64,000 nucleotides of DNA from Thalia democratica. Lineage: Eukaryota. The position numbers and the translations under genes were made by a program. The notes below the pieces were generated by a model. The model searched no databases. It was not told the origin of the DNA and worked only from the letters and a program-made list of their open reading frames with translations. The DNA is taken from assembly GCA_965202585.1 (NCBI GenBank), contig OZ241833.1, positions 28,954,001 through 29,018,000 on the forward strand, given 5' to 3'. Positions 1-22,400 of the stretch are shown piece after piece. The first letter of the stretch is position 1. Each line of letters opens with the position of its first letter.

Positions 1-1414
1 TAAAATAAACAAAGTAACTTTTACTTCTAAAAACCTGAAATTCAAAAAATCTATGGCTACCATATCTCTAAGTTGAGTACATTTTGCACACTTCAAAACA
101 GTATTTCTTTTTTCATAAATTTTTTGAATTTATTTGTACAAAACTCATGCAGTATTAAATATTTTTATAATATTCAAACTAACTTAAATGAATATTGAAA
201 ACACTTCAGGTTTTCCATTTTCATTAAAACGTTTGAACTTTTTTTCAAATAGTACAAAGTGTTTTTAAATGTTAATTAAACTAAACTAATTAGGAACTTT
301 GATCAGAAATAAAATATAAATTTAACTGTTTAGTAGCAGATGGTTTTTACTTAACCATTTGCAACTAAGAGTGCTAAAAACTTATCATTTAAAACGAAAG
401 TAGAGTTTTATAGATTATTTTGATATCAAGTCTCTGGATAAATTGTTCTATTGGCTTAAACTATTAGTGTGTATGTATTTATAGATAAGTGTATCAGGGA
501 GTAATGCTGCTTTAAATGGCTTATAGTTAAATTGCTTATTATTGTAATATTAATTTTCTACTTTATAATTTCACAACTTTACCAACATTTGAAGAAAAAA
601 ATATAGAATCAGAGGTCAAGATAAAGAATGTTCATCGAGATAGTTAATATATATGACATATGGTATTTTTATTGCTAATGTTTTTTTTTTTCTCGAGTAG
701 TCTTAAATTTTTTAGTAAAGTTAAATGGAATTTATATTCGATTTTGTTTGTATTCCACTTGAAAAATTTTGAAATTTTAGTAAAACCTTCGTTGACTCCT
801 GCTTGTTTGCTGTTTTTTGCAAAACTTCGGTTATTTTCAACATTTTTTCAATGTCTTAAGATTTTTTTTCATTTTAATTTAAGAATGGAGTTATTGGTAG
901 TTGTTGTTGAATTTCAGGGTGCACGAAAAGTACGTTGGTAGTGTACAATTTTTTTTTTTGAAACTTTGTAAACATTCTGACATTTTTTTCGAAATGACAG
1001 TAGATGGTCCGGATTCCGGGGTTTCTGAAAAAAAGCAAAAAAAGAAAATGTTTTAAGTATATTGGAGAGGAGTTTTAAAAATTACACTAGATATACCGGA
1101 AATTATTTGAAACTTACTTTAGATCAGTGGTCTACACAGTGTGCGTGCATCTGTTGCCCCGACCTTTAAATTTTGCTTAGCTTATTTTTTGTATGTGGAA
1201 AATCTTATAAGTAGACATCATTAAAATAACAGCTTCTTAGCTATAACCCTGCTAGAGCAGAACACTTATAAAAATTATGCTCTATGTTGTAGTTTTGTAA
1301 AATGAAAGAGGAAGGTCTTTTTTATAATTTAGGTTTATTTTGTAGAATTTTATACAACTCTTAGCTACTTTTTACAAACTATTTTCTTACTTATGTTTGT
1401 ATTAGTTTGTACTA

Positions 1415-3051
1415 ATTAGTTTGTATTAACACTTGAAAAAAAAATGTTTTAATTCGTTTGAGAAATCTGCTTAAGTATAAAAAATAAAAGAAATGAATTA
1501 TAGAGGGGATGGTTGGGTATCAAACTCGCTGTTGAGTTTGTGACCAACTTGAAAAACTTAAACATAGTTTGAAGCTTTCCTAGTGATGTTTTCCTTGTAC
1601 CTAAAGTATAATGTCTCGTCAATAGAATTAAAAACTATGCATATGTGTATTTAGAGGTAGTTTAAGTTTCGAATTCTTCTTTTCGCCGCTTTTTGGGTTT
1701 TCAAAATTCTTCAACATCTAAAGTTTCATCGTACATTCAAATTTTTTCAATGAACTTTTTTCAAATCTGTTCTTAGTTTCACGGTCTTTATAACAAAACG
1801 ATTATATAGGGCTAGAAATCAACAAAATATGTTATCAAAAAATTTAGTGCGTTACCTGGTAAAACCAAGACGTGGTAAACATTTTTTGTTTCATATAAAA
1901 ATGCAACTTTTTAAACTTCTTGTATAATTTGAATAAAGTATCCAACGGCTTTTGAGAATCTTATTTCAAGTGGCTCGTTTTTTTATTCAAAAGCTATTCT
2001 GAGAAACAGCTGAAGTAGCCTAATTTAGTTTTTTAATAGATAAGTAACTACTGAAACTTTATTTTTTATACCTAATAATGATATAGCCTTACCAAGCTTT
2101 ATTTAATACCTGTAGATGTAGCAAAATTAATTATTTGTATTGTTGAAACTTTGAAATTAAAAACCATACCAGTTAAAATAACAAATATTATTTTTATTTA
2201 TCAAAAATAAACTTTTCTTTTCACTTTTCATTTTTGGAATAAAAATAGAACTATCTACGCATTTTTTCTGGAAATATAATTATTACTATCGAAATTAAAA
2301 TAATTACCTGTTTTATTAGACAGAATTAAAACAAACGTAATTTTCAAGTTTTTTTTTAAAGAAAGCAAACTCAAAATGCTCACAAAATGTTAATTCTGAA
2401 TATTTGCACAATAAAAAATAAATTTATCAAACTTGTTTAATTTAAATATTTTTAACACTAATAGTATTTAAGTAATCTAGTATTTTTCAGTTTTTTTGAA
2501 TAAAGCATAGTAAGTACAGTTTATATACGGAGAGGTAATATGTAGTTATAAAAAAATTGTTTCAGCAAATATTAAACAAAGTTTAAGCCTTGAATTTTAT
2601 AAACAACACAGATGAGTTATCAATTTAATTCAGAAATAACTTTAAAACCTTATTTGGAGTAGTTAACCTTTAAATATAATAACATCCTTCATATCATTCA
2701 TGAACACTTGAAAATTATAATTCTTTTAAAATTTCTTGAACTTATCAATTTAATACTAAACGAGTTATGTCAAAGTAAAAAAAATATTTTGTACAAAACT
2801 TACACTTCTAACTGTTTAAAATATTTTTTTTTTTATCATTTCTAACTCTTGTGTTCCAACTGTTTTCAATTCAGCACTATTAGCTTCTAATTTCTTTTTC
2901 AACATTTGTACTTTTTGAAACTTACTACTCACAAAAATTTATTCTAAATTTATACTCGGGTAGTTAATATTTAGCTAAACATACTGATGTAATGAACGTA
3001 GAAAAAATAGTCTTCAAAAATCTGCATGATAGCATCAACGACGAAAATCTC
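1415..3051 (+). repeat. Segmental duplication block B' (copy of 20130-21752)
   Basis: Direct, colinear match by eye (roughly 90-95% identity with small indels). Confidence 0.92.
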
Positions 3052-3197
3052 GTGACTGAAGCCCGCGCGATATTTTTACTTCATAACAACAAATGGGAAT
3101 TAGACTTTTTACACTTACCAATTCGTCTGTTTTGTTTTCAAAGAGCTTTTAATGCTGGTTATTTCGCGACAAACAAAATCCAACTAACTTTTATATT

Positions 3198-4299
3198 CTG
3201 CTCTGTATTTAGTATTATATTTTGATAGTACTGCTTTGAAAATACAGAATACTTAAAATTGACAAAACTAAGTTTAATCTAATGTAAAAAAAATATCCCT
3301 ATAATAAATATTAAAATATTTAACAAAAAATGTCTGTTTGTAACAAAAATCATCTATACTTGTTTATAAATAAGATGCCAACACAAAAATCTATAAAAAA
3401 AAATACAACTTGTTTCTTAGAGTTATAAAACAAAGCGAAAAGTAAGTTAAGTTTAGAAGTTAATCATTAAATTTTAACGTATCAAGTATAAATTGCTTAC
3501 TACCCAAATCAAATGTTTTACCACACCAATGTGAGTAAAGCTTATTATTCCCCTTTAGTTCAACTTTTCAAACTTTGATTATTTTTTAGAAGTTTAAATA
3601 AAGTTATATTGATTTTATAAAACTTAAATAACTTCTATCAATATTTCTTTATTCATTTTTACCATACAATAACTTAGTAATTTCTGGACTATCGACAGAC
3701 TTTAGTTGCTAATTGTTATTCTTGTGTAACAGCAATTGTAAAATGCACAAAATTATCTGCACAAGTTTATATTAAGTTAGTATTTATGTACTACGGTAAG
3801 TTGTAAATGATTAGGCACTTGAATTCTGTTCCAGTCGACCTTTAAAGCTGCCATGAATATTAAGACTTCGGGTATGACTAATATCAATTTAAAAGTAACA
3901 AACTGCGGGGAACGAATTCTCTGAACTTAAATTTTCTTTAAGTAAAATAGTACTTTCGTTTTCCCAAAGACATTCCACCTGTAAAGCTTTTTTTATTAAT
4001 TTCTATAAAAAATAACTTAAGTTAAATAAACTTCAAACAAGCTTTAAAACTTCATTACTTGTTTTTCTGGGTGTACATCTCCATTTTGTGTGTAGTCAGA
4101 TCCGAGCTATCGACCTTCTGTTATCATAATTAGTAGTTAGTTCACGTCTAACATTGAAAATACAAAAAAAATCACTTCTTAACTTTTATTCTCATTTAAT
4201 GTTTTGGTTTTAAACAACCTACATTAGTTTGTATTAACACTTGAAAAAAAAATGTTAAAATTCGTTTGGGAAATCTGCTTAAGTATAAAAAAATAAAAG
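3198..4299 (+). repeat. Segmental duplication block A' (copy of 19142-20204)
   Basis: Direct, colinear match from ctgctctgtattt to aagtataaaaaaataaaag. Confidence 0.92.
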
Positions 4300-4300
4300 T

Positions 4301-7300
4301 CCACTGGTTTAAATTGGTAGGCGACTCTTGAGTATATTATCGCCATAATGGTCTATTATTGACTAATCGTGTTTTGTCTATAAATATTATGTCACACCTG
4401 TAGTTATATGATTTCAATTTTTTATATTAAAATTTTTAAATATGGTTTATTGTAAACCCTTCAAGAAGAAAATGTTATTGTGTTTGAACTAAAGATAAAT
4501 TTCTAAAAGCTTTTTGAGCTATTTTACAATTATTTTTCTTGTAAGTTAATACTTTCAAAGTTTTAAAAGTAAATTTTCACAAACACTCTTACAAAATTAT
4601 ACTTACTTTTTGAAAAATGTAGACAGACCTATGTGTTTCTTATTAAAAATTTCAACTAAACCAGTTTTTGTTTAAATTTGTTATCATAGTCACACCTAGC
4701 ATTCAAATCTCATGACTTTAGGAACAATAAAAAAAAGATATGTAGTATCAATGAATTTGTCAATCAATCAAAATCTAATGATATTTTATAAACTATTATT
4801 ATTCAAAACATCCGAACCTTGGCACATGTACACAAAAATTAAAGTATGTAACTAAAACTTTAAAGACTTATGGATAATTAAACGTTTTTTTTTTCGGTTT
4901 TATTTTTTTTAGTTAACTTAAAGTTTGTTAATACTATTGAAAATAAACGTTAAAGCAAAAGTTACAAAATGCTCAGTTAAAAAACAAAAGTGTTTGCTTA
5001 CGAAAATATACGCGGGTAGAACCAGCAAAAATCTAGTCAAAATCTACCAAAAAGTTTATAAAACAAGATTTGGGTATCTATCAAGGAAGTTGATAGACTA
5101 CAGAAAACAAATAGTAGTTCAGCGATTGGGGAACATTTGATTTTAATTTGAAACTCTTCGTAAATTATAACGCGGATAACTATATCAAAATAAACCAAGA
5201 ACTCGTAATGACTTTCATTTATATCAGTATATATCTTAAGCCTAAAACCAGAAGTGTTTAAACAAAATTAATCAGTCTATTCGACCATATTGTTTACTTC
5301 GTTGAACTTAAATTGATTGATTTTATAACTGCGTTACATTTTATCACTACTGTGTTAAAGACTCAGTTTTTTTTAGTTCATGATGTTACAAACCACGAAC
5401 TAAATACTGATGAGCGTGGTTGAAAAGTACTTCTACTTGTGTTTATATTCAGTAAAATATTAATGTATTACTTTTTAAGAACAATGACTTAGTGAAGTAC
5501 AATAAATATAACATTATAAAAATCAATGGTAAAGTTGTTGTTAAAAAATCAATTTAAAAAATCAAATAAAGTTGTTAAAAGCAGCATGATAAAAAATAAA
5601 GTAAAATTTACGAGCTAGTACGAAAAAAAATCTAAAAAATTAAAAACAGTCTACAAACTTTAGACAGTTTAAAGTTGGTCACAAATATTTTGTAAATAAA
5701 ACATTCAGATAAAAAAACAACATTTAAAAAATAAGCTTTTTGTGATAATCTCATTAAATTAATTAATTCTATAATAGAATTTCCAGGATAAAACAAGTAA
5801 AATATGCTTCAAACATAGTTAAGAGGTAGAGTTGACTGCTTAATAGAAATTTAACATTTTCAGCTGATACTATCTAACACTGAGTTAATTTCCTTTAAAT
5901 AGCTTTTATTTCTGCGGCTCTTCAGTCTTTTAAAATACAATGAACAATCCAGATTGGAACATTGAACTTCTGTCAGTCGCGTGCAATTCCTACATACCTT
6001 TAAATTAAAAAATAATAATCATTTCTACCAGTTACTTCACAATCTCTCAATTCCTACCAACTATATGAAAATTTGTAATTATAACCAGTATTTATACTTC
6101 ACAGTCATTTCAAAAAGCATTTTTTGTTAAGTTAAAAACAATAGCTAATAATATTTAATGGTTGAGTAAATTATTCAACCATGAAATCATGAAATTCAAT
6201 CATTTTGTTCAATTCAATCATTCAACAAAAAATGACGAAATTTAAACAATGAACACTCTTTTAAGAGTTTTTTCAGTTTTTTTTTTCAACTTTTTGTAGC
6301 TAATTTTATAATTTTTCATCTGAATCATTTCAATAAAAAACTTGATAATTTATCAACGAACCAGGTTCAACACGTGTTCTTTTCGCTGCAAGCTCCTGAT
6401 TGTGCCGTTCAAACTGCTCACCGCGGCTTGCAAAGACCCGGAGTCGCCCGTGCAAACGTGGCACAGCTTCTTCAGCCTCCCCTTCACCACCCGGTGGCAC
6501 GCCAGGCAGTGCTTGGATTGGAAGAATTGCGATATTGTGGACTGAATGAAGGTTGTTGTTTTAAATAAAGCGCACGCGTGAGGACATGCAAGCTTTCAAG
6601 CACCATTACTTTATATTGTTTATTATAAGATTAAAACAAATGCTTAGATTGATCGAAAACTTATATTATTTATAATTAAATAGTTATAAAAATTTTTAAT
6701 AATTTAACTCTAACAAACCATATACAATTTGCAGTTAATATTATTTTAACTTTTTTTATTTTTAGAATTTCTTAAACACCGCACAAACTAGTATTTAAAT
6801 AGTTATCGTAAAAAAATTTTCCCGCCAACCTTGACCGCCTGGCTCTCGGCGTGGTGGAAGTACGTCATAACTCTGGGGGTTTCCCTGAACCAATCGTAAA
6901 CGTCGCATCCGGGTATCAGCGAAAGCATCCTGTGCAATGCGGGCAGCAGCATCTTTGTGACGTAAAAGCGGCCGTTCAAGCGCAGCGCCGGGTCCTTGAT
7001 GACGTTGCGGGGTTCGCGCACCAGCGTGAAAAGGGGAACCCCGGGCGACCCGCACACCACCACGTACGGGACGTGCTGGCCCGGGTGGTACGAGGACCTG
7101 CTGTCCATTGCTTTTCGTTTTCTGTTTCGGGGAATTTATTTTGTGGTAATTTTGTTTGGTACGTTTTTAGGGTGTTTCGCTTATTTTTGATTATTTTAAT
7201 ATGTTAGTTTTTTCACACGGATCTTATTAATTCTTTTTGGTTGCTTTAAACTGCTAAATTTTATTATTTTATAAATTTGATTTTTAAACCTTTTAAAACG

Positions 7301-10300
7301 TGTAAAAACTAGTTCTAGAACCAAAAAATCCGTGCAAATATAAAAAGTAACTGGAGTCACTTAAAAACCCTAATAAATTCTACACATTTTTTTAAATTTT
7401 TTAAGTAAAAATTGTAAACTAACCTTGCCAGCACAAGACCAGGAACAATGGCTCCGGGTTTGTAATTATTTATTCCCCGGAATTCCTTGGAAATTATGTA
7501 TTTTTCAAAGTTCAAATTTTCTTGTAGGACTTTTGAACACTGACTTTGTACATAAGCTTTGACCTGAAAATATTATTGTTTACATTATATCTTTACTATA
7601 AGCAGTAGTTTTCAGTTTTACTTTCAGTTTACTTAAAGCAGGATACTTTAAGAGTTTCATGTTTTTTTAGGTCTATAGGTTGCTGTTTTAAAAGTGCTAT
7701 TATTCTATTTTAATTTAAAAGTTTTAAATATTTTTTTTCACCAGCATTAGCTCATAGTTCCTATTCTAACTCTTATACTGGGAACTGCGAACAAAGCAAT
7801 TGGTCTTAATACAAAGTCAACTTCAGTTTGAACATAGTATTAGAAAATTTAATTAGATGCAAACGACAACTCTCAACAAAGTATTTTCATTCAAGACAAG
7901 CCGATTACAACCGAAGCTAATGAACATTTTTTTCATCAACCAACACAACAACCACCGCACCTCGCCCATGGCCTCCTTGTCGAAGATGAGGCGGAGGACG
8001 CCCTCCAGCGTCTCGCTGACGATCAGGCACCCGTCCCGCCTCACCGTCTCGATCCCCTTCGCGTCGAAGGTGGGCTGCGACTGGTCACGTGACTCGTACG
8101 CGTACCCCGCGTACCTCTTCTTCGTCTGCAGTATGCACGGGCTGTAGATCTGAAAACGCTTTGTTTTTAAGGTTAACATTAGCAGATGAATTTTATTAAA
8201 AGAATTTTGGTAAAGTTGTTCGAAGCTTGAAACTTTTGTTACCAAAAATAACATATCGTTCAGTTGACGTAAGTATTCAATTTTTTTTACTTTTCGATGA
8301 TATATGAAAAAGTATATTTATTTACTTTGCATCACAGTGTATAAAGGTTTGAAAAACTAAACTTAAACTTCAACACTTTGAAAAGTTTTAAATTTCATTT
8401 AGATCACCTTAATCCTCAATTATATCCAAAAGTATATTTTTTAAAGGTTACATCAGTACATAAACTGTTTTTAAAATGGCAAAAACTAATGTACAAAACT
8501 GTTTACTTTTGCAAGTTTGTGCTTATAACTAACTAATTTATTAACTAGTTGTGTGTCATTTTTAGTAGTGGTTGCATCAATTAAAGCTTTTACCGTAATA
8601 AAAAACAAAAAATATTGTTATTCGTTCTTAAATCTTTTTTAAACTTATTTGCCAAGCATTTATACTGTATAAAGACACAACAAAACTTGATAAGTTTTGT
8701 TTTTATTAAAAAGACTATTTTTAAAACTTTATTCATTTATTGTTTTTCTATATAGTATATTTTAACAAGTAAAAAATTAAATTGATAGTTTAAGTGAATA
8801 GATAAAAATAGGTTTACATTAAATTTTATTTATAATAGAAATTATTTTTAAATGTCTCAAGAAGTCGGAATTTAAAATACTACAAAACAGTACTGAAATT
8901 TTAAACAATAAAAATGGTGTTGTAGCTAAAAGCCTAAGTAAGTTATTAAATAATTTTGATTTTTTTTTTAAATATTTTATAATAATAAAGAAAACTTTTA
9001 AATAACTTTATATTCTATATTAAAAAAACAGCTAAAACTTTTATTTAATAATAATTCTTCTAGCATATAACGAGCTAACTGGTGTAAAAGCCCCAACAAA
9101 CGAAAAGGACTTACAAGTTTCAAGTAGTTAGTTAATAACTTTGATATTTTATTAATAAGGTCAATCAGTAAAGATTATTTTGAAACTGATATTATAAAAT
9201 AAATACACTAATCGCTAAGGAAACAGTTAAATATATTTTTAGATAAAAAATGTAAGATTTAAATTCTAATTATTAAAAAAAAAGGTTAATAAGTATAAAA
9301 AGTTTTAAAAACAAATAGTTATTGTTATGTTTTACTTTGATACTAAAAAAAAAGATTGAAAGTAAACTAGTGTATATAACATGTTTTAAACAATAAAGTA
9401 GTCTGTAAAATAAACCAAAATTAGTTTCTATAAAAGCTGATTGAATAAAAAGTGATATAATTAATAAAAACAAAACATGAAAAATCTTACAAATTAAGAG
9501 TCAGTACAATATTTCTTTAATTTAACACACAGATATTTTTTACTTATTAAAAAACTCTAGGAAAGTCAATTGCAAAGCCACAGAAGATTTCATACGCCCA
9601 AACCGAAAGAAAAATTCAAAATACAAAAGAAGACATTAAAAGTTCTTCAAACAGACTCCCACTAAATGCTGACAATTCCACATATTTAAATTCTCAAACA
9701 CAAAACTCGCCAGGTCCCAGCGTCGCCAAAGATACTGACTCAAGGGACGTTTCTACCGACGAGATGAAACCACAGGGATTGTCACCCACCCTGAGCAACG
9801 ACGCTGAGTTCCTGCTGGCTCGTTTCTTTCTCGAAAACACCGACCCAACCCACGCCGACGTCAAGCTCCTGTCCGAAGCGACCGGGACGAGCGAAACGTC
9901 GCTGAGGAGCTGGTTGCGCGAACAAGAGCTGAAGAGGAGCGGCAACTGCGCACTGAGCGCAAACCAGGTCCCGTTGGCCGTTTTGCGCTTCAACTCGAAC
10001 CCGAAACCGACGCTGGCCGAGTACGAGGCTTTGAGCGGCGAGCTGGGAGCGGAAAGGCTGGCGGTCTTTCGGTTTTTCAGGAACAGAAGAAACAACCTCG
10101 GGGTGAGCAGCTCGCACAGGTACTCGTTTGAATGCAGCGGAAAGGAAAGAGAAAAGTTGGAAGAGCCTTATGGAAAGTGCTGCGACGGCAAAAGGCTGTC
10201 AGTTGAAAAACTGATAGAGGTGGCAAAGGAGATCGGTGTTGACGAGCTAAAAGTAGAAAATTATTTTTGCAACAAAATGGTGAACTTTCGTAAAGAAAAA

Positions 10301-10719
10301 AGGCTGCAAAGTAATAGCGGAACAAAGACAGCAAATAAGTACCAAGGTCTTCCAAACACTGCACTTAATTCAAATGTTCAAAGTTTGTTGGGCAATGAAC
10401 CTTCGACTTTAGTAATTACTAGCGCACCCAATCAAATACTTCAAAATCAACCAATTATAAACATTGGACCAAATTACGCTTTAAATCCTTACAACACACA
10501 CGTAACAAATCAAATTTACAGTAACTGGATTGCTAATAACTACTATCATCAAAATTTAAAAAAATATTTTAACTTTTTGAATCAATTGAACCGAGCATCA
10601 TTATACAGTCTGCTGTCTCGAGACAGGTCAAATTCAAACGGCCAGTACTTGCGAAACGTGAGAAATTACCAACAACTCGGTGAAAGTGCCGGTAACAGCC
10701 AAGTGAAAAACAACCGAGC
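4301..10719 (+). repeat. Segmental duplication block C' (copy of 23479-30598; REV3L 3' exons plus homeobox gene)
   Basis: Direct, colinear match, with copy-specific indels in the introns. Confidence 0.95.
5860..8149 (-). pseudogene. REV3L: Partial duplicate of REV3L: last five exons only (thumb plus CysA/CysB C-terminal domain), no catalytic motifs
   Basis: Exons 7961-8149, 7424-7563, 6830-7121, 6362-6541 and 5860-5997 have the same lengths (189/140/292/180/138) as the last five exons of the full gene, with intact GT-AG sites and no stops or frameshifts. The upstream exon carrying YGDTDS is not in the duplicated block. Confidence 0.85.
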
Positions 10720-10759
10720 AGCACACCACTGTTGTAATTTTTCTTCAAAGCTTAGTTAA
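8852..10759 (+). CDS. Second copy of the triple-homeodomain gene (main exon 9561-10759 open; new 16-aa C-terminus; exon 1 has a ~100-bp deletion)
   Basis: Paralog of 28614-30598. Exon 9064-9123 and acceptor TAG|9561 are conserved and the main exon is open from 9561. Homology ends at 10719, then the frame reads into unrelated sequence (..NNRAAHHCCNFSSKLS*). Confidence 0.65.
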
Positions 10760-10954
10760 AAAAGAAGATAATATTTAGTGGCTCACGTAAACTACAGTGT
10801 ATTTTTTTTTTCCGACGGATAAAATGGTAGGACCTCCCTGACCAACGCAAAATTATATTAACAAACTTATCAAAACAGTGCTAACTAACTATTAATTTTG
10901 ATAAAAATATGAAAAAGTTTTAATCAATATTGTTTGTTAATTTTAATTCTCTTT

Positions 10955-12849
10955 AACCTCTTTATTGTCAGTTTCTGAATATTAGCTTTACGAAATCATA
11001 TTACGCTAAAATACAAATTTTATAAGCTTTGTCTAAATACTTGTTTGTCTATTTTCATTTACAAATATTGAGTCATTCTTTACTAATTTACTTAATAAAA
11101 TTTAACGGCAAGAAAAACTTAAAGGCATTTTATTTACTTAATTAAATTATTTTAAAGTACAGTGTATTACTTTACGAACTTAACCAATAACTTATAATAC
11201 TTTAGAAAATTTTATCAAAGTTTAAAACTTACAGTAATAAAATATTTCTATTGAGGCAAGATTTAACAACTAAACAAAATGTATTGTTTTCTCTCCTGAT
11301 ATATAGACTATGTACAGTAAATATATTTACATTTTATTTCAAACTATTATCAATCAGTAACTACACTACAACAAAAATTTATAAATTGTTTTTGTGTTTT
11401 TTAAATTTGCTAGAAATGTTGGTTTAAATGAGGTAATAAGTGTAAGTTTGGTTTATTGTTAAAGCAGTTTATAAAAAGATCATTTTATGTAAAAAAGAAA
11501 TATAAGTATGTTGACTTTCATAGAAATCTAAGTCATTTTAACAAAGTGTTTCTCATCTTTAGTACAATAGCTGATTAATAAAATTAAAGTACTGTTTACT
11601 TTATTATTTCAAAAAAAGGTGGGAGGTTGTTTAGTATAGTCTTGACATAACTGTTTAGTATAACTTTTTTTTTTAATTAAAAAATAAAATATTTCCCGAA
11701 CATTATAACAGTACTAATAAGCATTTCAACAAACTTCCTCTTAATTTCAGCACAGCCTTAAATAGATAAATTAAAAACTAACCGATGCTTTAAAACAAAT
11801 GTTTCTTTCGTAACTAAACATTTTCTATTGAATAATTTTAAAAATCATTTGAAACTTGAAAAACAAGAGTTCAAAAGTACTATAAACTTATTTTACGTTT
11901 CTTAGACTTTTGCTAAAAACTTATGTTAAGATACTTGTGTTGTTTGTATTTAAAGTAAACTACTACTTTTTAAACTAGGGGTAAGACGTGGCCCACGGAG
12001 GTAATTAATTAAAGTTTAATTGTAAATTAAAGTTTAAGCTTGTTTGTGATATATCGCTTACGATTTTTATAAACAACAGAAAATTTTACTCTGCAACTTT
12101 GTTCTTTTACTTGTTGTCTATTTACAATAAATGCTAATAAGAAAATGCTAGAAACTTAAAACAATAATACTTTATGTAAAATAAAAATTCAACTTATGTA
12201 TAAGCTATCGTTATTCTATAAGTTTTTACTTATAACAGAATAAACTTATTTTTTGTCTTTATTAATGTAGCTCCTCTACTTATTATCCCCTCTTGTTGTA
12301 ACTCTTGTAAATAGTCAAAAACGAAACTTTTTTTTTTGACCCAAACTAATAAAAAAAGTTTTAATTATTTTTTATATAATTTAAACCAGCCATTCTTAAC
12401 TAGGGGTAAACTTACCCCTGAGGGTTAATTCACTTGTTTTAAGTGGTAAATTTTATTTAATACGAGGTATGAAAATTAATTCTAATTAGTTGTTTTTTAA
12501 CTTAGAAGTTAGTATCAAACTGTATATTTTTTAAGTTAAATAAAGTCTTTACGTTTTACGATTTTTTATATATAATAAGCTTAAAGTTCAAAAAATCAAT
12601 TCTCAAAATTAAACACTATTTTGTATATTTGGGGTAGATTTGGTAGTCACCATCCAAAAAAGCTAAATTTGTTAATAACCTTCCTAAAAGGAGTAGAAAA
12701 TTAATAAAAGGTTGAGAACCGCTGTTTTAAACAATTTTATTTTTTGATAAGCTAATAAAATGCATTAATTTTTCTTTAAGATAAATTAAAAAATTTAAAA
12801 CGATGCTGCTCTGTATTCAGTATTATATTTTGATAGTACTACTTTGAAA
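10955..12849 (+). repeat. Segmental duplication block X' (copy of 17280-19185)
   Basis: Direct, colinear match from aacctctttattgtcag to gatagtact..tttgaaa. Confidence 0.93.
12387..12724. mobile_element. hAT (Charlie/Buster-like) MITE, copy inside block X'
   Basis: Termini CAGCCATTCTTAAC.. / ..GTTGAGAACCGCTG; 8-bp TSD atttaaac/ttttaaac with central TA. Confidence 0.7.
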
Positions 12850-13924
12850 TTTATATTGAATTATAATTTATATGGATTACTGTAAATTACTTTCTTAGAG
12901 TGGTTTTCAGGTTAAATATATCTATGAAGTAAACCAGTGCTTCTAAACCTTTTTCTAGTGGCGGAACCCTTTTCCAAAGTTCAACTTTTCCGCGGAACCC
13001 CTACTTTAATTTTACATAAAATGTTTATTATGATGTTTCCTGCTAAAACAAACGAATTTCAGTGAAAAGAGACTTTTTTCGACCAGTTACTGGACAGTCT
13101 TTTTCACGTTTCTGACGAAACCAAATGTAAAGGGGGCTGTCCAGCTTGTCAATGTAGCCTCTCCGTATTCTTTTTGACGATTTAAAGGCTCCAACTAGTT
13201 TTAGCTCCTCCTTTGGACTTTAAACTTTTTTAACTTTCCTTGCTTCTCAAAATATTGTTCAAAGTCGGTTCAAAGTTATAATATTTAATTTTTTGTCTTA
13301 AGATTGATTTTCTCGTTTTTGAATTATCAAAAACTATTTAAACTAAAATATTTTAAATTTCGTAATTAAAATTTTTGATTTATATTATAGCCACAAATTT
13401 ATAGTATGCAGTTAATTCTTTCGAAAAATTCATCGTACTAATTTACAACTCTCATTGTGGACAAAGTAAGCCCAAAACAAAACTTATTTTGATGTACTAT
13501 AAATAAGACATTAAAATACTTCTCAAAAATGCTGCTTATAACTTTAATAATTAGTAGAGATGGTAAATCATTTAGTTTGGTTGTACCTTGATGAACTTAA
13601 GTATTTAACTTTTAAAAAATGTTGATACAAAAAAAAAAGATAGCCAATAAAAAATAATGTCGAACAAAAGGTTAAGTTATAGAAGAAAAAAAAATCTACT
13701 TAAAATGCTGTTGTATTCTTTTTATGAAGCTTAAAGCTAAAAAATATTTTAAGAACTTCATTTTTTGTTTTAAAAAAAAATTAAGCTAATATGTAAAATA
13801 GTATTATAAACTGTTTTAATTTTTCAAACAAGGTGTAAAAAAAAAGTACACTATATATTAAAACTCATGTAATTTAACATTATAGTAAATTTATAATAAC
13901 GTCGCATCCGGGTATCAGCGACAG

Positions 13925-14350
13925 TAAATAGTAGAAAATTATTTCCGCAACAAAATGGTGAACTTTCGTAAAGAAAAAATGCTGCAAAATAATAGTGGGA
14001 CAATATCGGCAAAAAAGTCTCAAGGTCTTCCAAACACTGCACTTAATTCAAATGTTCAAAGTTTGTTGGGTAATGAACCTTCGAATTTAGTAATTACTAG
14101 CGCACCCAATCAAACACTTCAAAATCAACCAATTATAAACATTGCACCAAATTACACTTTAAATCCTTACAACACACACATAACAAATCAAATTTACAGT
14201 AACTGGATTGCTAATAACTACTATCATCAAAATTTAAAGAAATACTTTAACTTTTTGAATCAATTGAACCGCGCATCATTGTACAGTCTGCTGTCTCGAG
14301 ACAGGTCAAATTCAAACGGCCAGTACTTGCAAAACGTGAGAAATTACCAA
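13925..14350 (+). pseudogene. Third, 5'-truncated fragment of the homeobox gene (end of HD3 helix 3 plus N/Q-rich region)
   Basis: Matches ~30127-30552 ([21 protein letters not shown]); corresponds to ORF 13955-14398. Confidence 0.85.
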
Positions 14351-15539
14351 AAACTCTATAAAATTATGACTGTAGTAGACAAAAACAATTTATTGTAAAT
14401 TAATGAAAACAACATAAATCAAAATATTATACTTGTAAAATAAAGTTGTTAGTAGTTTTATAACTAAAAGCGCAAGTAAACAAACAAAAGACTTGTAGTG
14501 TATAAGCATTTTATCTAAATTGAAATAACTAATGTTTACGAAAAGCAGCAACTTGTAGTAAAATATTGTTATTTAAAAAATTTAAAGAACTACTTAAAAA
14601 TACACTATTATATAAAAAACATAACTTTCTTCTATAATACAATTTATGATTAAATAAATACTAAAAAATGACTATAGCAGATTATGCAATTCGTTTTGTT
14701 CGTTAAAGATAACTTTATTTGAAAACTTATAAGTGTATAATATAAGACTGTTATTGAAAATCAGATTCCTTAAAAAATAAGAATAAAAGAACAAAATATT
14801 TTTTTTTATAACATAATGTAATATTAAACTACAGCTTTACAGAAAAAACTAACGATTATGGTAGTCAAGTATAGTTTGTTTGTATTAATATTGCAATTTT
14901 TTAAAACTTATAAATATAGCACAAAGAAGTAACCTTTATATAACTAAAAAACAAGTTAATTAAAAAAGTAATGACATACAGAAAAAAAGCATAACTTTAT
15001 TTAACCTAAAACACTAACTAGTTAAAATAGATACTTATACAACAAAAGTTTTAATTATTTATTATCACTACTGCGAGTTTGTTGTCAATACGATGGACCC
15101 AGGCATCAAAACTTAGGCCACTTGAACTTAAAAACAGATAACGAAGAAATGAAGAATACGAATAACACAAAAAGTTAATTTTGATAAAACAAAAAAAAAA
15201 CATAATTTAATTGCAAGTTTATAGATAAACATAAAAATAAAAAAGTTTAACACACAAACTTATACTTTTTAACTTATTTACGCTTTGATGTAGGATGATT
15301 TTGTAAACCTTGTCTTTTCTTCTCCTTAAAAGCAATATCATCATTAACACTTTCAATAATCTGTTATATTAACAAAATTTGTTATTAAAATTACAAATTA
15401 TTGAACGACAGAAAATGGCCCTCAATATGTTTTGTCTTAAGACCTGATGTAAGGAAAAACTTTTCGGGTACAGTTTAATTTCCTTTCCAGGACAGCTTAA
15501 CATAAAAAGTAAACTTTTTTCGAAAAATAATTACAGTAG

Positions 15540-15757
15540 CAGGGGCGTCGCGTAATTTTTTTTTATAATAAAACTTTTTTTTAAGTATTAAACTGTTAAT
15601 AATATTATTTTTAAAACAAAATTTTTTTACTAACGATTTTCTGTAATTGCAGTATATTTACCCTAGTAAATTAATTTTTGAACTATATCAAATCAAGGGG
15701 TTTCTTAAATACTTTTATGTTTTTCGCACCCCTAATAAAACACCACGCGTCGCCATT
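15540..15757. mobile_element. Small MITE-like element with imperfect GC-rich TIRs
   Basis: CAGGGGCGTCGCGT at ~15540 and ACGCGTCGCCATT at ~15745; TSD not clear. Confidence 0.4.
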
Positions 15758-16237
15758 AGACTGTGTAGAAAATTTAGATATGAAATTAATTCTTTATTGA
15801 TAAAGAAAACTAATCCAAAGTTTTGTAACTTTTAAATAGAAGCATAATTTTTTTTTTATTGAAAGAGCACTAAACTGAATTGCCCAAACATAATAGATAA
15901 ATAAGCAAAATTACTAAAATTTAAAGGTTTTGTAAAAATAAAAATTCTCACTTAAAAGGTTAATTTTATACAAAAAATAACTATTTGTAGAATAAAATAG
16001 ACTTTTTTTTATTAAAAGAGCAGCTTTATACAAAAATAATCAGTATAACTTATATATAAGAATAACTTAATGACGAAGCATAGTTAATGATATGACAAAA
16101 TTTACAAAAAATATATGACTGTGGTAGACAATTGTTATAGCGTTTAGTACATGTTTTTTAACAACGTTTTTTATCAGTAAAATACTTAAAATAAGGTAAA
16201 TTAAGAAAACAGAAATACATTTCATCAATTTTCACAG

Positions 16238-16667
16238 TGATAACGCGAGGAAAGCTGTTTTTGTCATTTACAAGTACCGCGCGGAAAAAGGACTGCCTCC
16301 TGGCGGCATCTGGCTTGATGTAACCCTTCGGGATTCGTCATCTACTGGCTCGGATGCCAACCCCTTCGTTTTCTCCAACGGAGCTAAAGTAGAAGATACC
16401 AACGTTGTGATAAGGTGGGATGTAGACCAGCCTTTTTATTCGTTAAATAACCACTGCTCTTACCTGGCTGCCGGGGGACTTAAAGAAAGTGGCTGCATTG
16501 ATTATTATGCCGCACTATGTAAAACAAAAGGAAAATGCGAAGAGGAGGAAGAGTGCCCAATAAACAACGAATCAGGCCGTTCCCGCGCAAACTTGCCGGT
16601 TTTCGCGCTTTTTATGGCGGGCAGCGTCTTTCGAGCCTTCTACGCCCTCGTCGGCCCTGTGGCGTAA
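16238..16667 (+). CDS. Terminal exon of a C-type lectin-like domain protein with hydrophobic C-terminal tail
   Basis: Acceptor TTTTCACAG|16238. Open frame DNARKAVFVIYKY..GGIWLDVT..PFVFSNG..IRWDVDQP..NNHCSYL..GLKESGCIDYYAALCK matches the CTLD WIGL / F.W.DG / W..GEP / C / W.D..C / .C pattern. It ends ..LPVFALFMAGSVFRAFYALVGPVA*. GC-rich island; upstream exons not found. Confidence 0.7.
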
Positions 16668-18722
16668 GCTTGCGCGCGCCTTCGTTCGAGTGGAAACTCT
16701 TCTTTCGAGTTTGCACCTGAAAAACCGTTGTTACTATTTGTAAGTTTAAAACATACACGTTTTATCGTGTACACGAATATTATGTGAGTCTTACTTTGTT
16801 TGTTTCTGTATTCTTTTGAAATTCTTGTTTGCTAATTTTTGTTGATGTAAAGCAATTAACATGTGGCACTTGGGTACTTTAAGCATTATAAGTACATTAA
16901 ATCAACATGTTACTCTTATAAATCAAACAGTTTTTACGTTATGAGTTGTCCATAAAACTTTTTACGACTGCAAATTACCAAATTTTATTATTTGAAACTT
17001 TTATACATTTTATTTGCTTTTACAGCACAGCTTCACAAATAATCAAAAATAAGTGTAATTAGAAGTAAAATGATATTTGTTTTATAAAGTTTAGGCTTAC
17101 ATAGATTTCAACTTTTAAACTTTACTTAAAACTTTTGTTATTCAAGTTAATAAACCATGCTTTTTTTACCTTTTAAGCAAAAAAGATCAAAGCTTAAGGT
17201 TTTTTTTTAACGCAGGTTTACACATAAATTACATTTATTTTCTTTTTTATAATAATACTTTACTACATATTAAACTAAAAACCTCTTTATTGTCAGTTTC
17301 TGAATATTAGCTTTACGAAATCATATTACGCTAAAATACAAATTTTATAAGCTATGTCTAACTACTTGTTTGTCTATTTTCATTTACAAATATTTAGTCA
17401 TTCTCTACTAATTTACTTAATAAAATTTAACGGCAAGAAAAACTTAAAGGCATTTTATTTACTAAATTAAATTATTTTAAAGTACAGTGTATTACTTTAC
17501 GAACTTAACCAATAACTTATAATACTTTAGAAAGTTTTATCAAAGTTTAAAACTTACAGTAATAAAATACTTCTATTGAGGCAAGATTTAACAACTAAAC
17601 AAAATATATTGTTTTCTCTCCTGATATATAGACTTGTAAAGTATATATATTTATATTTTATTTCAAACTATTATCAATCAGTAACTACACTACAACAAAA
17701 AATTATAAATTATTTTTGTCTTTTTTAAATTTGCTAGAAATGTTGGTTTAAATGAGGTAATAAGTGAAAGTTTGGTTTATTGTTAAAGCAGTCTATAAAA
17801 AGATCATTTTATGTGAAAAAGAAATATAAGTATGTTGACTTTCATAGAAATCTAAGTCATTTTAACAAAGTGTTTCTCATCTTTAGTACAATAGCTGATT
17901 AATAAAATTAAAGTACTGTTTACTTTATTATTTCAAAAAAAAGGTGGGAGCTTGTTTAGTATAGTCTTGACATAACTGTTTAGTATAATTTTTTATAAAA
18001 TTAAAAGTAATTAAAAAATAAAATGTTTCCCGAACATTATAACAGTACTAATAAGCATTTCAACAAACTTCCTCTTAATTTCAGCACAACCTTAAATAGA
18101 TAAGTTAAAAACTAACCGATGCTTTAAAACAAATGTTTCTTTCGTAACTAAACATTTTCTATTGAATAATTTAAAAAATCATTTGAAACTTGAAAAACAA
18201 GAGTTCAAAAGTACTATAAAGTTATTTTACGTTTCTTAGATTTTTGCTAAAAACTTATGTTAAGATACTTGTGTTGTTTGTATTTAAAGTAAACTACTAC
18301 TCTTTAAACTAGGGGTAAGACGTGGCCCACGGAGGTAATTAATTAAAGTTTAATTGTAAATTAAAGTTTTAGCTTGTTTATGAAATATCGCTTACGATTT
18401 TTATAAACAAAAGAAAATTTTACTCTGCAACTTTGTTCTTTTACTTGATGTCTATTTACAATAAATGCTAATAAGAAAACGCTAGAAACTTAAAACAATA
18501 ATACTTTATGTAAAATAAAAATTCAACTTATGTATAAGCTATCGTTATTCTAGAAGTTTTTACTTATAACAGAATAAACTTATTTTGTGTCTTTATTAAT
18601 GTGGCTCCTCTACTTATTATCCCCTCTTGTTGTAACTCTTGTAAATAGTCAAAAACGAAACTTTTTTTCTTTTTGAACCAAACTAATAAAAAAGTTTTAA
18701 TTATTTTTTATATAATTTAAAC

Positions 18723-19059
18723 CAGCGATTCTTAACTAGGGGTAAACTTACCCCTGAGGGTTAATTCACTTGTTTTAAGTGGTAAATTTTATTTAATACG
18801 AGGTATGAAAATTAATTCTAATTAGTTGTTTTTTAACTTAGAAGTTAGTATCTAACTGTATATTTTTAAGTTAAATAAAGTCTTTAAGTTTTACGATTTT
18901 TTATATATAATAAGCTTAAAGTTCAAAAAATCAATTCTCAAAATTAAACACTATTTTGTATATTTGGGGTAAATTTGGTAGTCACCATCCAAAAAAGCTA
19001 AATTTGTTAATAACCTTCCTAAAAGGAGTAAAAAATTAATAAAAGGTTGAGAACCGCTG
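18723..19059. mobile_element. hAT (Charlie/Buster-like) MITE, same insertion as 12387-12724 (predates the duplication)
   Basis: CAGCGATTCTTAAC..GTTGAGAACCGCTG; TSD atttaaac/ttttaaac. Confidence 0.72.
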
Positions 19060-19479
19060 TTTTAAACAATTTTATTTTTTGATAAGCTAATAAAAATGCA
19101 TTAATTTTTCTTTAAGATAAATTAAAAAATTTAAAACGATGCTGCTCTGTATTTAGTATTATATTTTGATAGTACTGCTTTGAAAATACAGAATACTTAA
19201 AATTGACAAAACTAAGTTTAATCTAATGTAAAAAAAATATCCCTATAATAAATACTAAAATATTTAAAAAAAATGTCTGTTTGTAACAAAAATCATCTAT
19301 ACTTGTTTATAAATAAGATGCCAACACAAAAATCTATAAAAAAAAATACAACTTGTTTCTTAGAGTTATAAAACAAAGCGAAAAGTAAGTTAAGTTTACA
19401 AGTTAATCATTAAATTTTAACGTATCAAGTATAAATTGCTTACTACCCAAATAAAATGTTTTACAACACCAATGTGAGT

Positions 19480-22400
19480 AAAGCTTACTAATCCCCTTTA
19501 GTTCAACTTTTCAAACTTTGATTTTGTAAAACTTAAATAACTTCTATCAATATTTCTTTATTCATTTTTACCATACAATAACTTAGTAATTTCTGGACTA
19601 TCGACAGACTTTAGTTGCTAATTGTTATTCTTGTGTAACAGCAATTGTAAAATGCACAAAATTATCTGCACAAGTTTATATTAAGTTAGTATTTATGTAC
19701 TACGGTAAGTTGTTAATGATTAGGCACTTAAATTCTGTTCAAGGTGACCTTTAGGCTGCCATGGATATTAAGACTTCGGGTATGACTAATATCAATTTGA
19801 AAGTAACAAACTGCGGGGAACGAATTCTCTGAACTTATATTTTCTTTAAGTAAAATAGTACTTTCGTTTTCCAAAAGACATTCCACCTGTAAAGCTTTTT
19901 TTATTAATTTCTATAAAAAAGAACTTAAGTTAAATCAACTTCAAACAAGCTTTAAAACTTCATTACTTGTTTTTCTGGGTGTACATCTCCATTTTGTGTG
20001 TAGTCAGATCCGAGCTATCGACCTTCTGTTATCATAATTAGTGGTTAGTTCACGTCTAACATTGAAAATACAAAAAAATCACTTCTTAACTTTTATTCTC
20101 ATTTAATGTTTTGGTTTTAAATAACCTACATTAGTTTGTATTAACACTTGAAAAAAAATGATAAAATTCGTTTGGGAAATCTGCTTAAGTATAAAAAATA
20201 AAAGAAATGAGTTATAGAGGGGATGGTTGGGTATCAAACTCGCTGTTGAGCTTGTGACCAACTTGAAAAACGTAAACATAGTTTGAAGCTTTCCTAGGTG
20301 ATGTTTTCCTTGTACCTAAAGTATAATGTCTCGTCAATAGAATTAAAAACTATGCATATGTGTGTTTAGAGGTAGTTTAAGTTTCGATTTCTTCTTTTCG
20401 CCGCTTTTTTGGTTTCCAAACTTCTTCAACATCTAAAGTTTCATCGTACATTCAAATTTTTTTTAATAAACTTTTTTCAAATCTGTTCTTAGTTTCACGG
20501 TCTTTATAACAAAACGATTATATAGGGCTAGAAATCAACAAAATATGTTATCAAAAAATTTAGTACGTTACCTGGTAAAACCAAGACGTGGTAAACATTT
20601 TTTGTTTCATATAAAAATGCAACTTTTTAAACTTCTTGTATATTTTGAACAAAGTATCCAACGGCTTTGGAGAATCTTATTTCAAGTGGCTCGTTTTTTA
20701 TTCAAAAGCTATTCTGAAGTAGCCTAATTTATTTTTTTAATAGATAAGTAACTACTGAAACTTTATTTCTATACCTAATAATGATATAGCCTTACCAAGC
20801 TTTATTTAATACCTGTAGATGTAGCAAAATTAATTATTTGTATAGTTGAAACTTTGAAATTAAAAACCATACAAGTTAAAATAACAAACATTATTTTTAA
20901 TAATCAAATATAAACTTTTCTTTTCACTTTTCATTTTTGTTATAAAAATAGAACTATCTACGCATTTTTTTCTGCAAATATACTATCGAAATTGAAATAA
21001 TTAACTTTTTTATTAGACATAATTAAAACAAACGTAATTTTCAAGTTTTTTTTTAAAGAAAGCAAACTCAAAATGCTCACAAAATGTTAATTCTGAATAT
21101 TTGCACAATAAAAAATAAATTTATCAAACTTGTTTAATTTTAATATTTTTAACACTAATAGTATTTAAGTAATTTGGTATTTTTCAAATTTTTCGAATAA
21201 AGCTTAGTAAGTACAGTTTATATACGGAGAGGTAATATGTAGTTATAAAAAAATTGTTTCAGCAAATATTAAACAAAGTTTAAGCCTTGAATTTTATAAA
21301 CAACACAGATGAGTTACCAACTTAATTCAGAAATAACTTTAAAACCTTATTTGGAGTAGTGAACCTTTAAATATAATAACATTCTCTAAATCATTCATAA
21401 ACACTTGAAAATTATAATTCTTTTAAAATTTCTTGAACTCATCATTTTAATACTAAACGAGTTATGTCAGAGTAAAAAAAAATATTTTGTACAAAGCTTA
21501 CACTTCTAACTGTTTATAATAATTTTTTTTTATCATTTCTAACTCTTGTGTTCCAACTGTTTTCAATTCAACACTATTAGCTTCTAATTTCTTTTTCAAC
21601 ATTCGTACTTTTTGAAATTTACTACTGACAAAAATTTATTCTAAATATATACTTTGGTAGTTAATATTTAGCTAAACATACTGATGTAATGAACGTAGAA
21701 AAAATTAGTCTACTTCAAAAATCTGCATGACAGCATCAACGACGAAAATCTCCGGCCTTTTTTGCGAGAAAATTGGCAATGTGATTTGCTGCAAGGTATA
21801 TATACTTTTTGTTAATTGTCTTTTTTTTAACTTTTTTTTTTGATTTAAAGCTGTAAACAATTCGTTTTTCTCGTAAGTGTTTAAATAACATGCTATATAG
21901 ATAAATTTTTAATAACAAAAAGCTGTTGTTATTACAAAAGACAAAAACTGATTTCACACTTGTTTAAAATTTGGTGCTCATGCCACGAATATTCCTAGGA
22001 ATGAAAATGATTAAAATCAATAATAAAAAGAAAAACTGATTTGAAACATTTCCAATACATACTTTAAAATTTTCACAAACATTAGCTTTCATACCAGGTA
22101 GCAGTGGATTCGAAAAGTTACGCTCTTGTATAATTTCAATCGAAACGTTAAACTGACAAGTGCGTAAAACTGCTACACCATGAAGTTTTAAATGAAAAAT
22201 GCGTGAGTTTTAAATTGAACTTATTAATTTCACAAAAACTGATTTTCTAGATGAAGCTTTAGGTATTTCAGTTTAATTTTCGATTAAAGGGTGAATCTCA
22301 GTATGTAAATAGTTTTATTCAGATGTGTTAAAAAACCGACTAGATTAAATTTACAACATCGGTTCAAAAAGGTTTTTAATTGCCTTGTCGCCTAAAAACA

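What the first reader, a model, noticed from the sequence alone, without database searches (positions are those of the whole stretch)
1415..12849. Shuffled ~11-kb segmental duplication with overlapping block ends
The source order at 17.3-30.6 kb is X-A-B-D-C, but the copy reads B'-A'-C'-X' with D missing. Block ends overlap in source coordinates: X' runs 44 bp into A (19142-19185) and A' runs 75 bp into B (20130-20204). Short foreign fillers lie at 3052-3197 and 10720-10954, and a micro-duplication (attagtttgta twice) lies at 1400-1425. A'-C'-X' is a circular permutation of the source with B-D removed. Inference: replication template switching (FoSTeS/MMBIR) or a circular DNA intermediate, rather than simple unequal crossing-over.
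Basis: partly seen in the sequence, partly recalled or inferred. Interest (0 to 1): 0.7.

Follow-up and report, generated by a model that had tools for sequence, protein, structure and literature searches.

The report
Edge of a 470-kb mosaic duplication array
The "shuffled 11-kb duplicate" is real, but it is only the right-hand edge of a 470-kb patchwork of repeatedly re-copied and re-joined fragments of a ~45-kb stretch between two genes, so it records many ordinary duplication, deletion and gene-conversion events, not one exotic event.

Summary
Window 1415-12849 is B'-filler-A'-C'-filler-X' relative to X-A-B-D-C at 17280-30598.

The source/copy reading does not hold. Every block belongs to a local array at C9:28,513,137-28,985,887 (about 473 kb). 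X and its upstream partner W have 20 or more copies. Full-length copies occur nowhere else in the 802-Mb assembly.

The 270 kb of array I could read is tiled by 192 pieces of only about 51 kb of non-redundant sequence. That sequence holds the convergent 3' ends of a PAQR/HlyIII-like gene and the DNA polymerase zeta (REV3) gene.
- 94% of the tiled bases are in direct orientation.
- About 30 of about 111 junction types recur in 2-7 copies.
- Microhomology of 4 bp or more occurs at 53% of insert-free junctions, against 4% by chance.

In the finding itself:
- The A'->C' junction is identical in a copy 405 kb away, so it was inherited.
- The two 47-bp "overlapping ends" carry different array haplotypes.
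- Block trees place B', C' and X' with different relatives.
- Gene-conversion patches are evident.

Microhomology-mediated joining is supported as a class of event. A single event, or a circle from the in-window source, is not.

The scan had noted other tandem gene arrays in this genome, but not this one.

The parts
910..1374 (-). Left flank: inverted fragment of the array's left-hand parent sequence (L:10715-10282)
   Evidence: Tiling; five further copies at 87-94%.
1375..1429 (+). Junction J1: about 40 bp of junction sequence. It ends in a stuttered ATTAGTTTGTA / GTTTGTA motif that sits on imperfect homology between the two parents. Private to this copy.
   Evidence: TRF; alignment; tiling.
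1415..3051 (+). Block B' (= source 20130-21752): the tail of a truncated unit
   Evidence: The tree puts the in-window B with three other copies to the exclusion of B' (100/99).
3052..3194 (+). Junction J2 filler: 143 bp with no match in the array. It is made of a 56-bp piece (95% to C10:26437999-26438054, minus strand) and a 91-bp piece (86% to C5:14296254-14296344, minus strand).
   Evidence: A 189-bp short-read unitig over 2984-3172, with 0 differences and depth about 45-50, bridges B' into the filler.
3195..4299 (+). Block A' (= source 19139-20204)
   Evidence: The best relatives are other copies at 97.4-97.9%, against 94.4% to the in-window A.
4299..4301 (+). Junction J3: deletion of source 20205-23478. 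Inherited, because the identical junction stands at C9:28552425|28552427.
   Evidence: 3195-5032 ~ left 57324-59152 at 97.4%, across the junction; base-level alignment.
4301..10719 (+). Block C' (= source 23479-30598). It carries orphan 3' exons of Pol zeta/REV3 on the minus strand (e.g. 7856-8317; the equivalent of source 25981-26397 lies at 6806-7135). It also carries a homeodomain ORF, 9764-10759 (+), whose 3' end is cut by junction J4a.
   Evidence: Pfam; PDB Pol zeta hits; trees; conversion mosaic.
10716..10965 (+). Second filler F: a fragment of the left-hand parent (L:13837-14087), with at least 8 other copies in the array. Junction J4a has 3-4 bp of microhomology; J4b lies in imperfect homeology.
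10955..12849 (+). Block X' (= source 17280-19185): the start of another truncated unit, from a different haplotype group than A'
12850..14356 (+). Patch of small array fragments: a 55-bp piece of module m30773 (12861-12915), a high-copy ~160-bp SINE-like element (12913-13079), module M1 (13078-13900), and a 430-bp homeobox fragment C'' (13927-14356)
14357..17279 (+). Module W: continuous with X in at least 9 other copies at 98-99.5%. In those copies it is preceded by the end of L; here it is preceded by C''.
17280..31887 (+). The colinear right-most unit, X-A-B-D-C. This is the true 3' end of the Pol zeta gene (minus strand) with the nested homeodomain ORF 29319-30806 (+). Position 31887 is the right limit of anything amplified.
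27031..27592 (.). A ~560-bp MITE/foldback-like dispersed repeat. It is present only in this right-most unit and is absent from C' and two other copies.

Best explanation
The 11.4-kb stretch is the right-hand margin of a large, real, multi-generation local amplification.

Origin and growth (steps 1 and 2 are inferred from the anatomy; step 3 is shown). An ancestral segment of about 40-50 kb held the tail-to-tail 3' ends of a PAQR/HlyIII-like gene and the Pol zeta (REV3) gene, plus the spacer between them. It has grown to about 473 kb.
1. Head-to-tail duplication occurred.
2. Microhomology-mediated non-homologous joins created new junctions. These could be replication slippage or template switching, or alt-end-joining; sequence alone cannot separate them. 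They produced truncations, internal deletions and small templated inserts.
3. Homologous unequal exchange and gene conversion between paralogous units re-copied the already rearranged structures and patched the units with each other's sequence.

Reading of the finding. It is at least three truncated units in series:
- [...B'], then filler.
- [A' with an inherited B-D deletion, then C'], then fragment F of the left parent.
- [X'...].

The 'source' at 17280-30598 is simply the one unit that stayed colinear, because it is the working end of the Pol zeta gene.
For: Local multi-copy nature:
- X has at least 28 matches and W at least 25. A-B-D and C pieces all lie within C9:28.536-28.985 Mb. Elsewhere there are only 300-450-bp dispersed repeats at 65-84%.
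- The edges are sharp and there are no intra-region repeats outside them.
- The edges lie inside the PAQR-like gene and the Pol zeta gene.

Mosaic structure:
- 192 tiles (median 601 bp) come from about 51 kb of library sequence.
- 165 tiles are + and 27 are -; 94% of the bases are direct.
- Copy depth peaks at W/X.

Re-copied junctions:
- About 30 of about 111 junction types occur 2-7 times.
- J3 is shared base for base with a copy 405 kb away.

Microhomology: at least 2 bp in 79% and at least 4 bp in 53% of 43 insert-free junctions, against 23% and 4% by chance. J1, J4a and J4b are shown in detail.

Different lineages in one stretch:
- The block trees disagree.
- The 47-bp overlap carries two different standing haplotypes.
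- The X of the J3-sharing copy falls in the other X clade.

Homologous exchange: identity between the same three copies switches from 86% to 99-100% in adjacent 300-bp windows.

Independent data: a short-read unitig with no differences bridges B' into the unique filler.
Against: - No long read spanning all junctions could be examined. Only one half of one private junction (B'->filler) is bridged by independent short-read contigs.
- The middle 200 kb of the array (C9:28.554-28.754 Mb) was seen only as hit coordinates, not as sequence.
- Some 'junction types' in the tiling are ordinary indels or TE insertions relative to the library copy. BLAST tile ends may also inflate overlap lengths slightly.
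- Two close breakpoint pairs (47 and 75 bp), and the coincidence of the B' start with the edge of a 66-bp deletion in three other copies, are somewhat more than chance and remain unexplained.
Confidence: 0.75

Rival explanations
1. One complex replicative event (FoSTeS/MMBIR), or a circular DNA intermediate, copied the in-window source X-A-B-D-C and laid it down as B'-A'-C'-X' with overlapping block ends.
For: - There are multiple clustered breakpoints.
- Microhomology or stutter occurs at J1, J4a and J4b, and inserted segments at J2 and J4. These are the junction features listed for FoSTeS/MMBIR in PMC9199198.
- A'-C'-X' is formally a circular permutation.
- Two breakpoint pairs lie within 47 and 75 bp.
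Against: - J3 is inherited from an ancestor shared with a copy 405 kb away.
- The X' and A' copies of the 47-bp overlap differ at two sites, and both variants are standing haplotypes in other copies.
- The in-window B and C are closer to other copies than to B' and C'.
- Block identities to the 'source' range from 84% to 98%.
- At least 20 further copies exist.
Confidence: 0.07
2. Assembly artefact. The order of blocks, or part of the array, comes from mis-joined or over-expanded near-identical repeats, or from uncollapsed haplotigs.
For: - Repeats of 95-100% identity are hard to assemble.
- Only short unitigs were available as independent data, and most of them stop at repeat branch points.
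- A 100-N gap lies at 37226-37325.
Against: - No other copy is more than 98% identical to any block of this stretch, so reads of HiFi quality are placeable.
- The unique filler junction is reproduced without a difference in two short-read runs.
- Junctions recur in copies that have since diverged by 2-10%. Mis-assembly would not produce that.
- With 20 or more copies, the pattern cannot be two haplotypes.
Confidence: 0.08
3. Transposon-driven. The blocks are parts of a mobile element (Helitron-like capture, a composite transposon or a retro-copy) that inserted repeatedly.
For: - Module m30773 (its 3' 1.35 kb) also occurs at 97% at C9:27.37 Mb, C9:34.73-34.76 Mb, C5:16.63 Mb and C5:63.01-63.05 Mb.
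- A DDE_1 transposase remnant lies in the left parent.
- W-X has 70-75% relatives on C2 and C5.
Against: - The blocks of the finding (X, A, B, D, C) have no full copies outside the array.
- No terminal inverted repeats were found. There is no ORF of 90 aa or more between 14398 and 25427, and no RNA family or tRNA.
- The copies contain introns and keep genomic colinearity.
- Truncation points vary on both sides.
Confidence: 0.04

Closest known systems
Complex (mosaic) segmental-duplication hubs and ampliconic arrays, as in primate pericentromeric/interspersed SDs
   Same: It is a local pile-up of re-duplicated fragments and 'duplicates of duplicates'. Rearranged junctions are themselves re-copied. 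Partial gene copies are stranded inside. Gene conversion acts between paralogues.
   Different: Here almost all material comes from one segment of about 45 kb and stays at its place of origin, 94% in direct orientation. Pieces are very small (median 0.6 kb). The host appears to be a pelagic tunicate (other agents' notes; not tested here).
FoSTeS/MMBIR complex rearrangements and chromoanasynthesis (review PMC9199198)
   Same: There are localized copy-number gains, many breakpoints, microhomology, and short or templated inserts at junctions.
   Different: The defining single-event origin fails. Junctions are of different ages, and one is inherited. Copy identities span 84-100%. Inversions are rare.
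Tandem gene arrays evolving by unequal crossing-over and concerted evolution
   Same: Units lie head to tail. Copy number peaks in the middle of the unit. Conversion tracts are present. The centre of the array shows regular 9.3/11.6-kb periodicity.
   Different: Most unit boundaries are non-homologous joins between different points of the unit, so there is no constant repeat unit at the array's margins.
Layered higher-order-repeat arrays of centromeres
   Same: By hit spacing, the core is regular and young and the flanks are older and scrambled. The midpoint of the 57.77-Mb scaffold (28.884 Mb) falls inside the array.
   Different: There is no evidence of kinetochore function. The units are kilobases of former unique, genic DNA, not a short satellite.

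Membership tests
Single-event FoSTeS/MMBIR rearrangement | Microhomology at breakpoint junctions | tested here: met
   J4a has 3-4 bp. J4b and J1 show imperfect 10-25-nt homeology with stutter. Array-wide, microhomology of 4 bp or more occurs at 53% of junctions against 4% by chance.
Single-event FoSTeS/MMBIR rearrangement | Inserted or templated segments at junctions | tested here: met
   The 143-bp two-part filler has matches only on C10/C22 and C5. The 229-250-bp fragment F comes from the left parent.
Single-event FoSTeS/MMBIR rearrangement | All junctions formed together from one template set | tested here: not met
   J3 is shared with a distant copy. The overlap haplotypes differ. The block trees disagree.
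Circular (eccDNA/rolling-circle) intermediate | The two ends of the permuted insert are copies of the same stretch of one molecule | tested here: not met
   The 47-bp overlap differs at 2 sites, each matching a different set of array copies. The C'->X' join goes through a fragment of another region.
Local tandem/segmental duplication array | Many copies confined to one locus, mostly in direct orientation | tested here: met
Local tandem/segmental duplication array | Secondary duplication of rearranged structures, and exchange between paralogues | tested here: met
   About 30 junction types are present 2-7 times. The conversion mosaic is shown.
Dispersed transposable element | Copies at unlinked sites, defined termini/TSD, coding or structural hallmarks | tested here: not met
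   There are no full copies outside the array, no TIRs and no ORFs. Only short embedded repeats are dispersed.
Haplotig / mis-assembly | Two copies only, half depth, and junctions unsupported by reads | tested here: inconclusive
   There are 20 or more copies, and one junction half is bridged by unitigs. Depth could not be calibrated and no long reads were available.
Centromeric higher-order repeat | Binding of centromeric histone / kinetochore function | not testable with these tools
   Only the position (the scaffold midpoint lies inside the array) and the layered regularity were seen.

The most novel reading that the evidence does not exclude
The 473-kb array is a satellite-in-the-making, or even the centromere region of this chromosome. 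On this reading a higher-order repeat was born from unique genic DNA between two convergent genes. It has a young regular core (9.3/11.6-kb periods at 28.585-28.71 Mb) and older scrambled flanks, and the finding is the outermost layer. A milder variant is a persistent replication-termination or fork-stalling hot spot between convergent genes, which keeps generating microhomology-mediated template switches.
Probability: 0.1. Interest if true: 0.65.

Novelty: new member of a known kind. Interest (0 to 1): 0.35.

Why it matters
The finding changes how the neighbouring findings should be read.
- The 'orphan' Pol zeta C-terminal exons and the extra homeobox genes are by-products of a large amplification, not targeted duplications.
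- Percent identity between 'copy' and 'source' cannot be used as a clock here, because gene conversion has patched the copies.

The array is also a compact natural record: more than 100 junctions from one ~45-kb template. It shows how microhomology-mediated joining and homologous exchange together turn unique genic DNA into a repeat array in a non-model chordate genome that seems prone to local amplification.

Tried and rejected
- **Genome without c-NHEJ (as in Oikopleura) to explain the microhomology:** rejected. Ku-domain exons are present on C2 and C5.
- **B-D as a DNA transposon with internal-deletion derivatives:** no terminal inverted repeats or coding capacity were found.
- **Functional RNA in the most amplified modules:** no Rfam family and no tRNA.
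- **Homologues of the 495-aa homeodomain ORF:** none found at E<=1e-3 among the 8000 candidates scored.
- **Independent assemblies holding the junctions:** no contig encodes the exact copy-specific ORF, and there is no metagenome contig with the B'->filler 31-mer.
- **Fetching the middle 200 kb of the array:** That part is known only from hit coordinates.
- **Breakpoint hot spot at 20128-20440:** 7 distinct breakpoints against 1.5 expected. This is only marginal after correcting for about 50 windows and for the higher copy depth there.
- **A regex scan timed out** and was replaced by BLAST.
- **Read laying:** the runs are short unitigs, so they cannot span more than one junction. J1, J3 and the filler->A' side were not bridged in the rows shown. 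That is not evidence against those junctions.
Full report
**1. Observation**

- B' 1415-3051 matches 20130-21752.
- A' 3195-4299 matches 19139-20204.
- C' 4301-10719 matches 23479-30598, in four pieces at 84.5-98.2%.
- X' 10955-12849 matches 17280-19185.

All matches are on the same strand, and D (21753-23478) is missing. The overlaps are 47 bp and 75 bp. The fillers lie at 3052-3194 and about 10720-10954. TRF finds the micro-duplication at 1401-1429. The window is AT-rich (about 28% GC) and has one 100-N gap at 37226-37325, which I left alone.

**2. The blocks are not a pair**

The window is C9:28,954,001-29,018,000 of an 802-Mb assembly. Searching that assembly gives many further copies.
- X has at least 28 matches at 96-99%.
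- The 2.9 kb directly left of X (W, 14357-17279) has at least 25 matches at 98-99%.
- A-B-D has about 29 pieces and C about 17 pieces.
- All of these lie on C9 between 28.536 and 28.985 Mb.

Elsewhere in the genome only short embedded repeats of 300-450 bp match, at 65-84%.

I fetched 200 kb to the left of the window, 60 kb at the far left and 20 kb to the right.
- Coverage by intra-region repeats is close to total from C9:28,513,137 to window 31887 (= 28,985,887).
- It drops to zero outside both edges.

**3. What was amplified**

On the minus strand the window carries a family-B polymerase gene. Its exons run from the POL3_N domain at 43971-44201 to the C-terminal exons at 25.5-26.4 kb. The best solved relatives are the yeast Pol zeta catalytic subunit. 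The right edge of the array (31887) lies in an intron of this gene.

The left edge lies in an intron of a HlyIII/PAQR-like gene on the plus strand.

The ancestral unit therefore held the convergent 3' ends of two genes and their spacer. The left-most copy completes the PAQR-like gene.

Several other copies keep the order W-X-A-B-D-C, so that order is ancestral.

**4. Anatomy of the array**

A greedy library shows that all 270 kb of array in hand is tiled by about 51 kb of non-redundant sequence.
- There are 192 tiles with a median length of 601 bp.
- 165 tiles are direct and 27 inverted; 94% of the tiled bases are direct.
- Copy depth peaks over the end of W and X (14-16 extra copies). It falls to 1-5 toward both genes.

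The tiling contains about 111 junction types, and about 30 of them occur 2-7 times. These include composite 2.1-2.2-kb units repeated six times.

Of 89 junctions that are not artefacts of library boundaries, 43 have no inserted bases.

| Microhomology | Observed among the 43 | Random joins of the same sequences |
|---|---|---|
| at least 2 bp | 79% | 23% |
| at least 4 bp | 53% | 4% |
| at least 6 bp | 37% | 0.6% |

The other 46 junctions carry 1 to more than 200 unaligned bases. Some of these are plain indels or TE insertions.

In the unfetched centre, hit spacings of 9,297-9,307 and 11,573 bp point to a regular higher-order repeat.

**5. The finding's own junctions**

- **J3 (A'->C', 20204|23479).** It is identical to the base, with shared derived substitutions, in the copy at C9:28,552,425. 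The B-D deletion is therefore inherited. The 75-bp 'overlap' joins an old deletion edge to an unrelated B' start.
- **J1.** It lies on imperfect homology between an inverted piece of the left parent and source position 20130. The GTTTGTA motif is stuttered there.
- **J2.** It holds a 143-bp insert absent from the array. Its two halves match only C10/C22 (56 bp, 95% and 89%) and C5 (91 bp, 86%).
- **J4a and J4b.** J4a has AGC/GAGC microhomology. J4b lies in imperfect homeology. The 'filler' between them is L:13837-14087 of the left parent, present at least 8 more times.
- **J5.** After X' come 55 bp of module m30773, then a high-copy SINE-like element.

J1, J2, J4 and J5 were found nowhere else.

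**6. Lineages**

- X and A give star-like trees.
- The in-window B groups with three other copies, excluding B' (100/99).
- In the 3' half of C, C' is sister to the copy just left of the window (100/100), and the source is sister to a copy 160 kb away. In the 5' half the same neighbour groups with the source.
- Sliding windows show identities flipping between 86% and 99-100% over 300 bp. This is gene conversion or recombination between paralogues.
- The 47-bp X'/A' overlap carries haplotype C...A in X' and T...G in A'. Each haplotype is shared with a different set of copies.
- The X of the J3-sharing copy falls in the other X clade.

The stretch therefore combines at least three unit lineages.

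**7. Independent data**

Four public runs hold parts of the stretch, and all of them are short unitigs. In two runs of 'organism A', a 189-bp contig at 2984-3172 bridges B' into the unique filler. It has no differences and a depth of about 45-50. Paralogous contigs show the normal X->A and A->B continuity. Other junctions were not bridged in the rows shown, as expected for unitigs in repeats.

**8. Mechanism**

Shown:
- The copies are local, multiple and direct.
- Junctions have been re-copied.
- Microhomology is enriched.
- One insert is templated from elsewhere.
- Conversion mosaics are present.

Inferred: head-to-tail duplication, plus microhomology-mediated joining, created the junctions over a long period. 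The joining could be slippage or template switching, or alt-EJ; junction sequence cannot separate these (PMC9199198). The long period is indicated by copy identities of 84-100%. Unequal exchange and conversion then multiplied and patched the units.

A catastrophic random re-ligation is unlikely given the orientation bias. A single FoSTeS/MMBIR event or a circle from the in-window source is contradicted by sections 5 and 6.

**9. Standing**

This is a complex segmental-duplication array, which is a known kind of structure, and a well-resolved new example of it. Other agents' notes on this genome report further ordinary tandem gene arrays and call the organism a pelagic tunicate. I did not test those claims.

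The midpoint of the 57.77-Mb scaffold lies inside the array. I record this as a lead only.

Noticed in passing
window 27031-27592: A ~560-bp MITE/foldback-like repeat with internal inverted arms (27164-27273 / 27445-27551) and thousands of genomic candidates. It sits only in the working Pol zeta intron; C' and two other copies have about 111-121 bp there. It is therefore an insertion (or replacement) that post-dates the copies.
   Followed up: partly
window 7954-8171 vs 27593-27810: The orphan Pol zeta exon (DNA_pol_B profile 264-329) is 98.2% identical between copy and source, while the flanks are 84-90%. With the conversion mosaic, this may be gene conversion and not purifying selection.
   Followed up: partly
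window 1415 / 20128-20195: The start of B' coincides within 1-2 bp with the left edge of a 66-bp deletion (20129-20194). That deletion is shared by three other copies, which form a clade in the A tree. Several other deletions start within the next 300 bp. This may be a local fragile motif; it is unexplained.
   Followed up: partly
L004:773-2744 (C9:28784773-28786744) and C9:34.73-34.76 Mb, C5:63.01-63.05 Mb: Module m30773 is the most repeated piece of the array. Its 3' 1.35 kb also occurs at 97% in two other local clusters and two single sites. Its 5' ends vary and it has internal ~100-bp subrepeats. It is probably a non-autonomous mobile element that itself tends to sit in local arrays.
   Followed up: partly
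C9:28,872,231-28,885,238 (L012-L014) and C9:28,782,006-28,795,686 (L003-L005): Two young sub-arrays. The first is a 2,113-bp composite unit stitched from four unrelated fragments of the ancestral segment, repeated about 6 times. The second is a ~2,217-bp unit repeated about 6 times at 99.8-100%.
   Followed up: no
L021:4108-4398 (-), about 15 kb left of the array edge: An ORF for a divergent histone H3-like histone fold (Pfam Histone, 5.6e-25). It lies next to an array that contains the scaffold midpoint. This is probably coincidental.
   Followed up: no
window 12913-13079: A high-copy ~160-bp SINE-like element, with more than 1,390 first-look candidates at 88-95% across all chromosomes.
   Followed up: no
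window 46044-48221 (-) and 49151-50092 (-): Two long uninterrupted ORFs in the unique part of the window. One is a 726-aa RMI1_N-plus-Tudor protein. The other is a 314-aa eIF2B-alpha-like protein (IF-2B, 3e-67). Both look intronless, unlike the neighbouring Pol zeta gene.
   Followed up: no
window 40662-41037 / 41309-41691 and 36110-36639: A 383-bp inverted repeat pair (96.9%) lies inside a Pol zeta intron. A ~167-bp tandem repeat lies next to the N gap.
   Followed up: no
window 9764-10759 (+): The copy's homeodomain ORF is cut by junction J4a, 208 nt before the source ORF's stop. It ends after about 13 codons read from the inserted fragment F, so its C-terminus is a duplication-breakpoint product.
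   Followed up: partly
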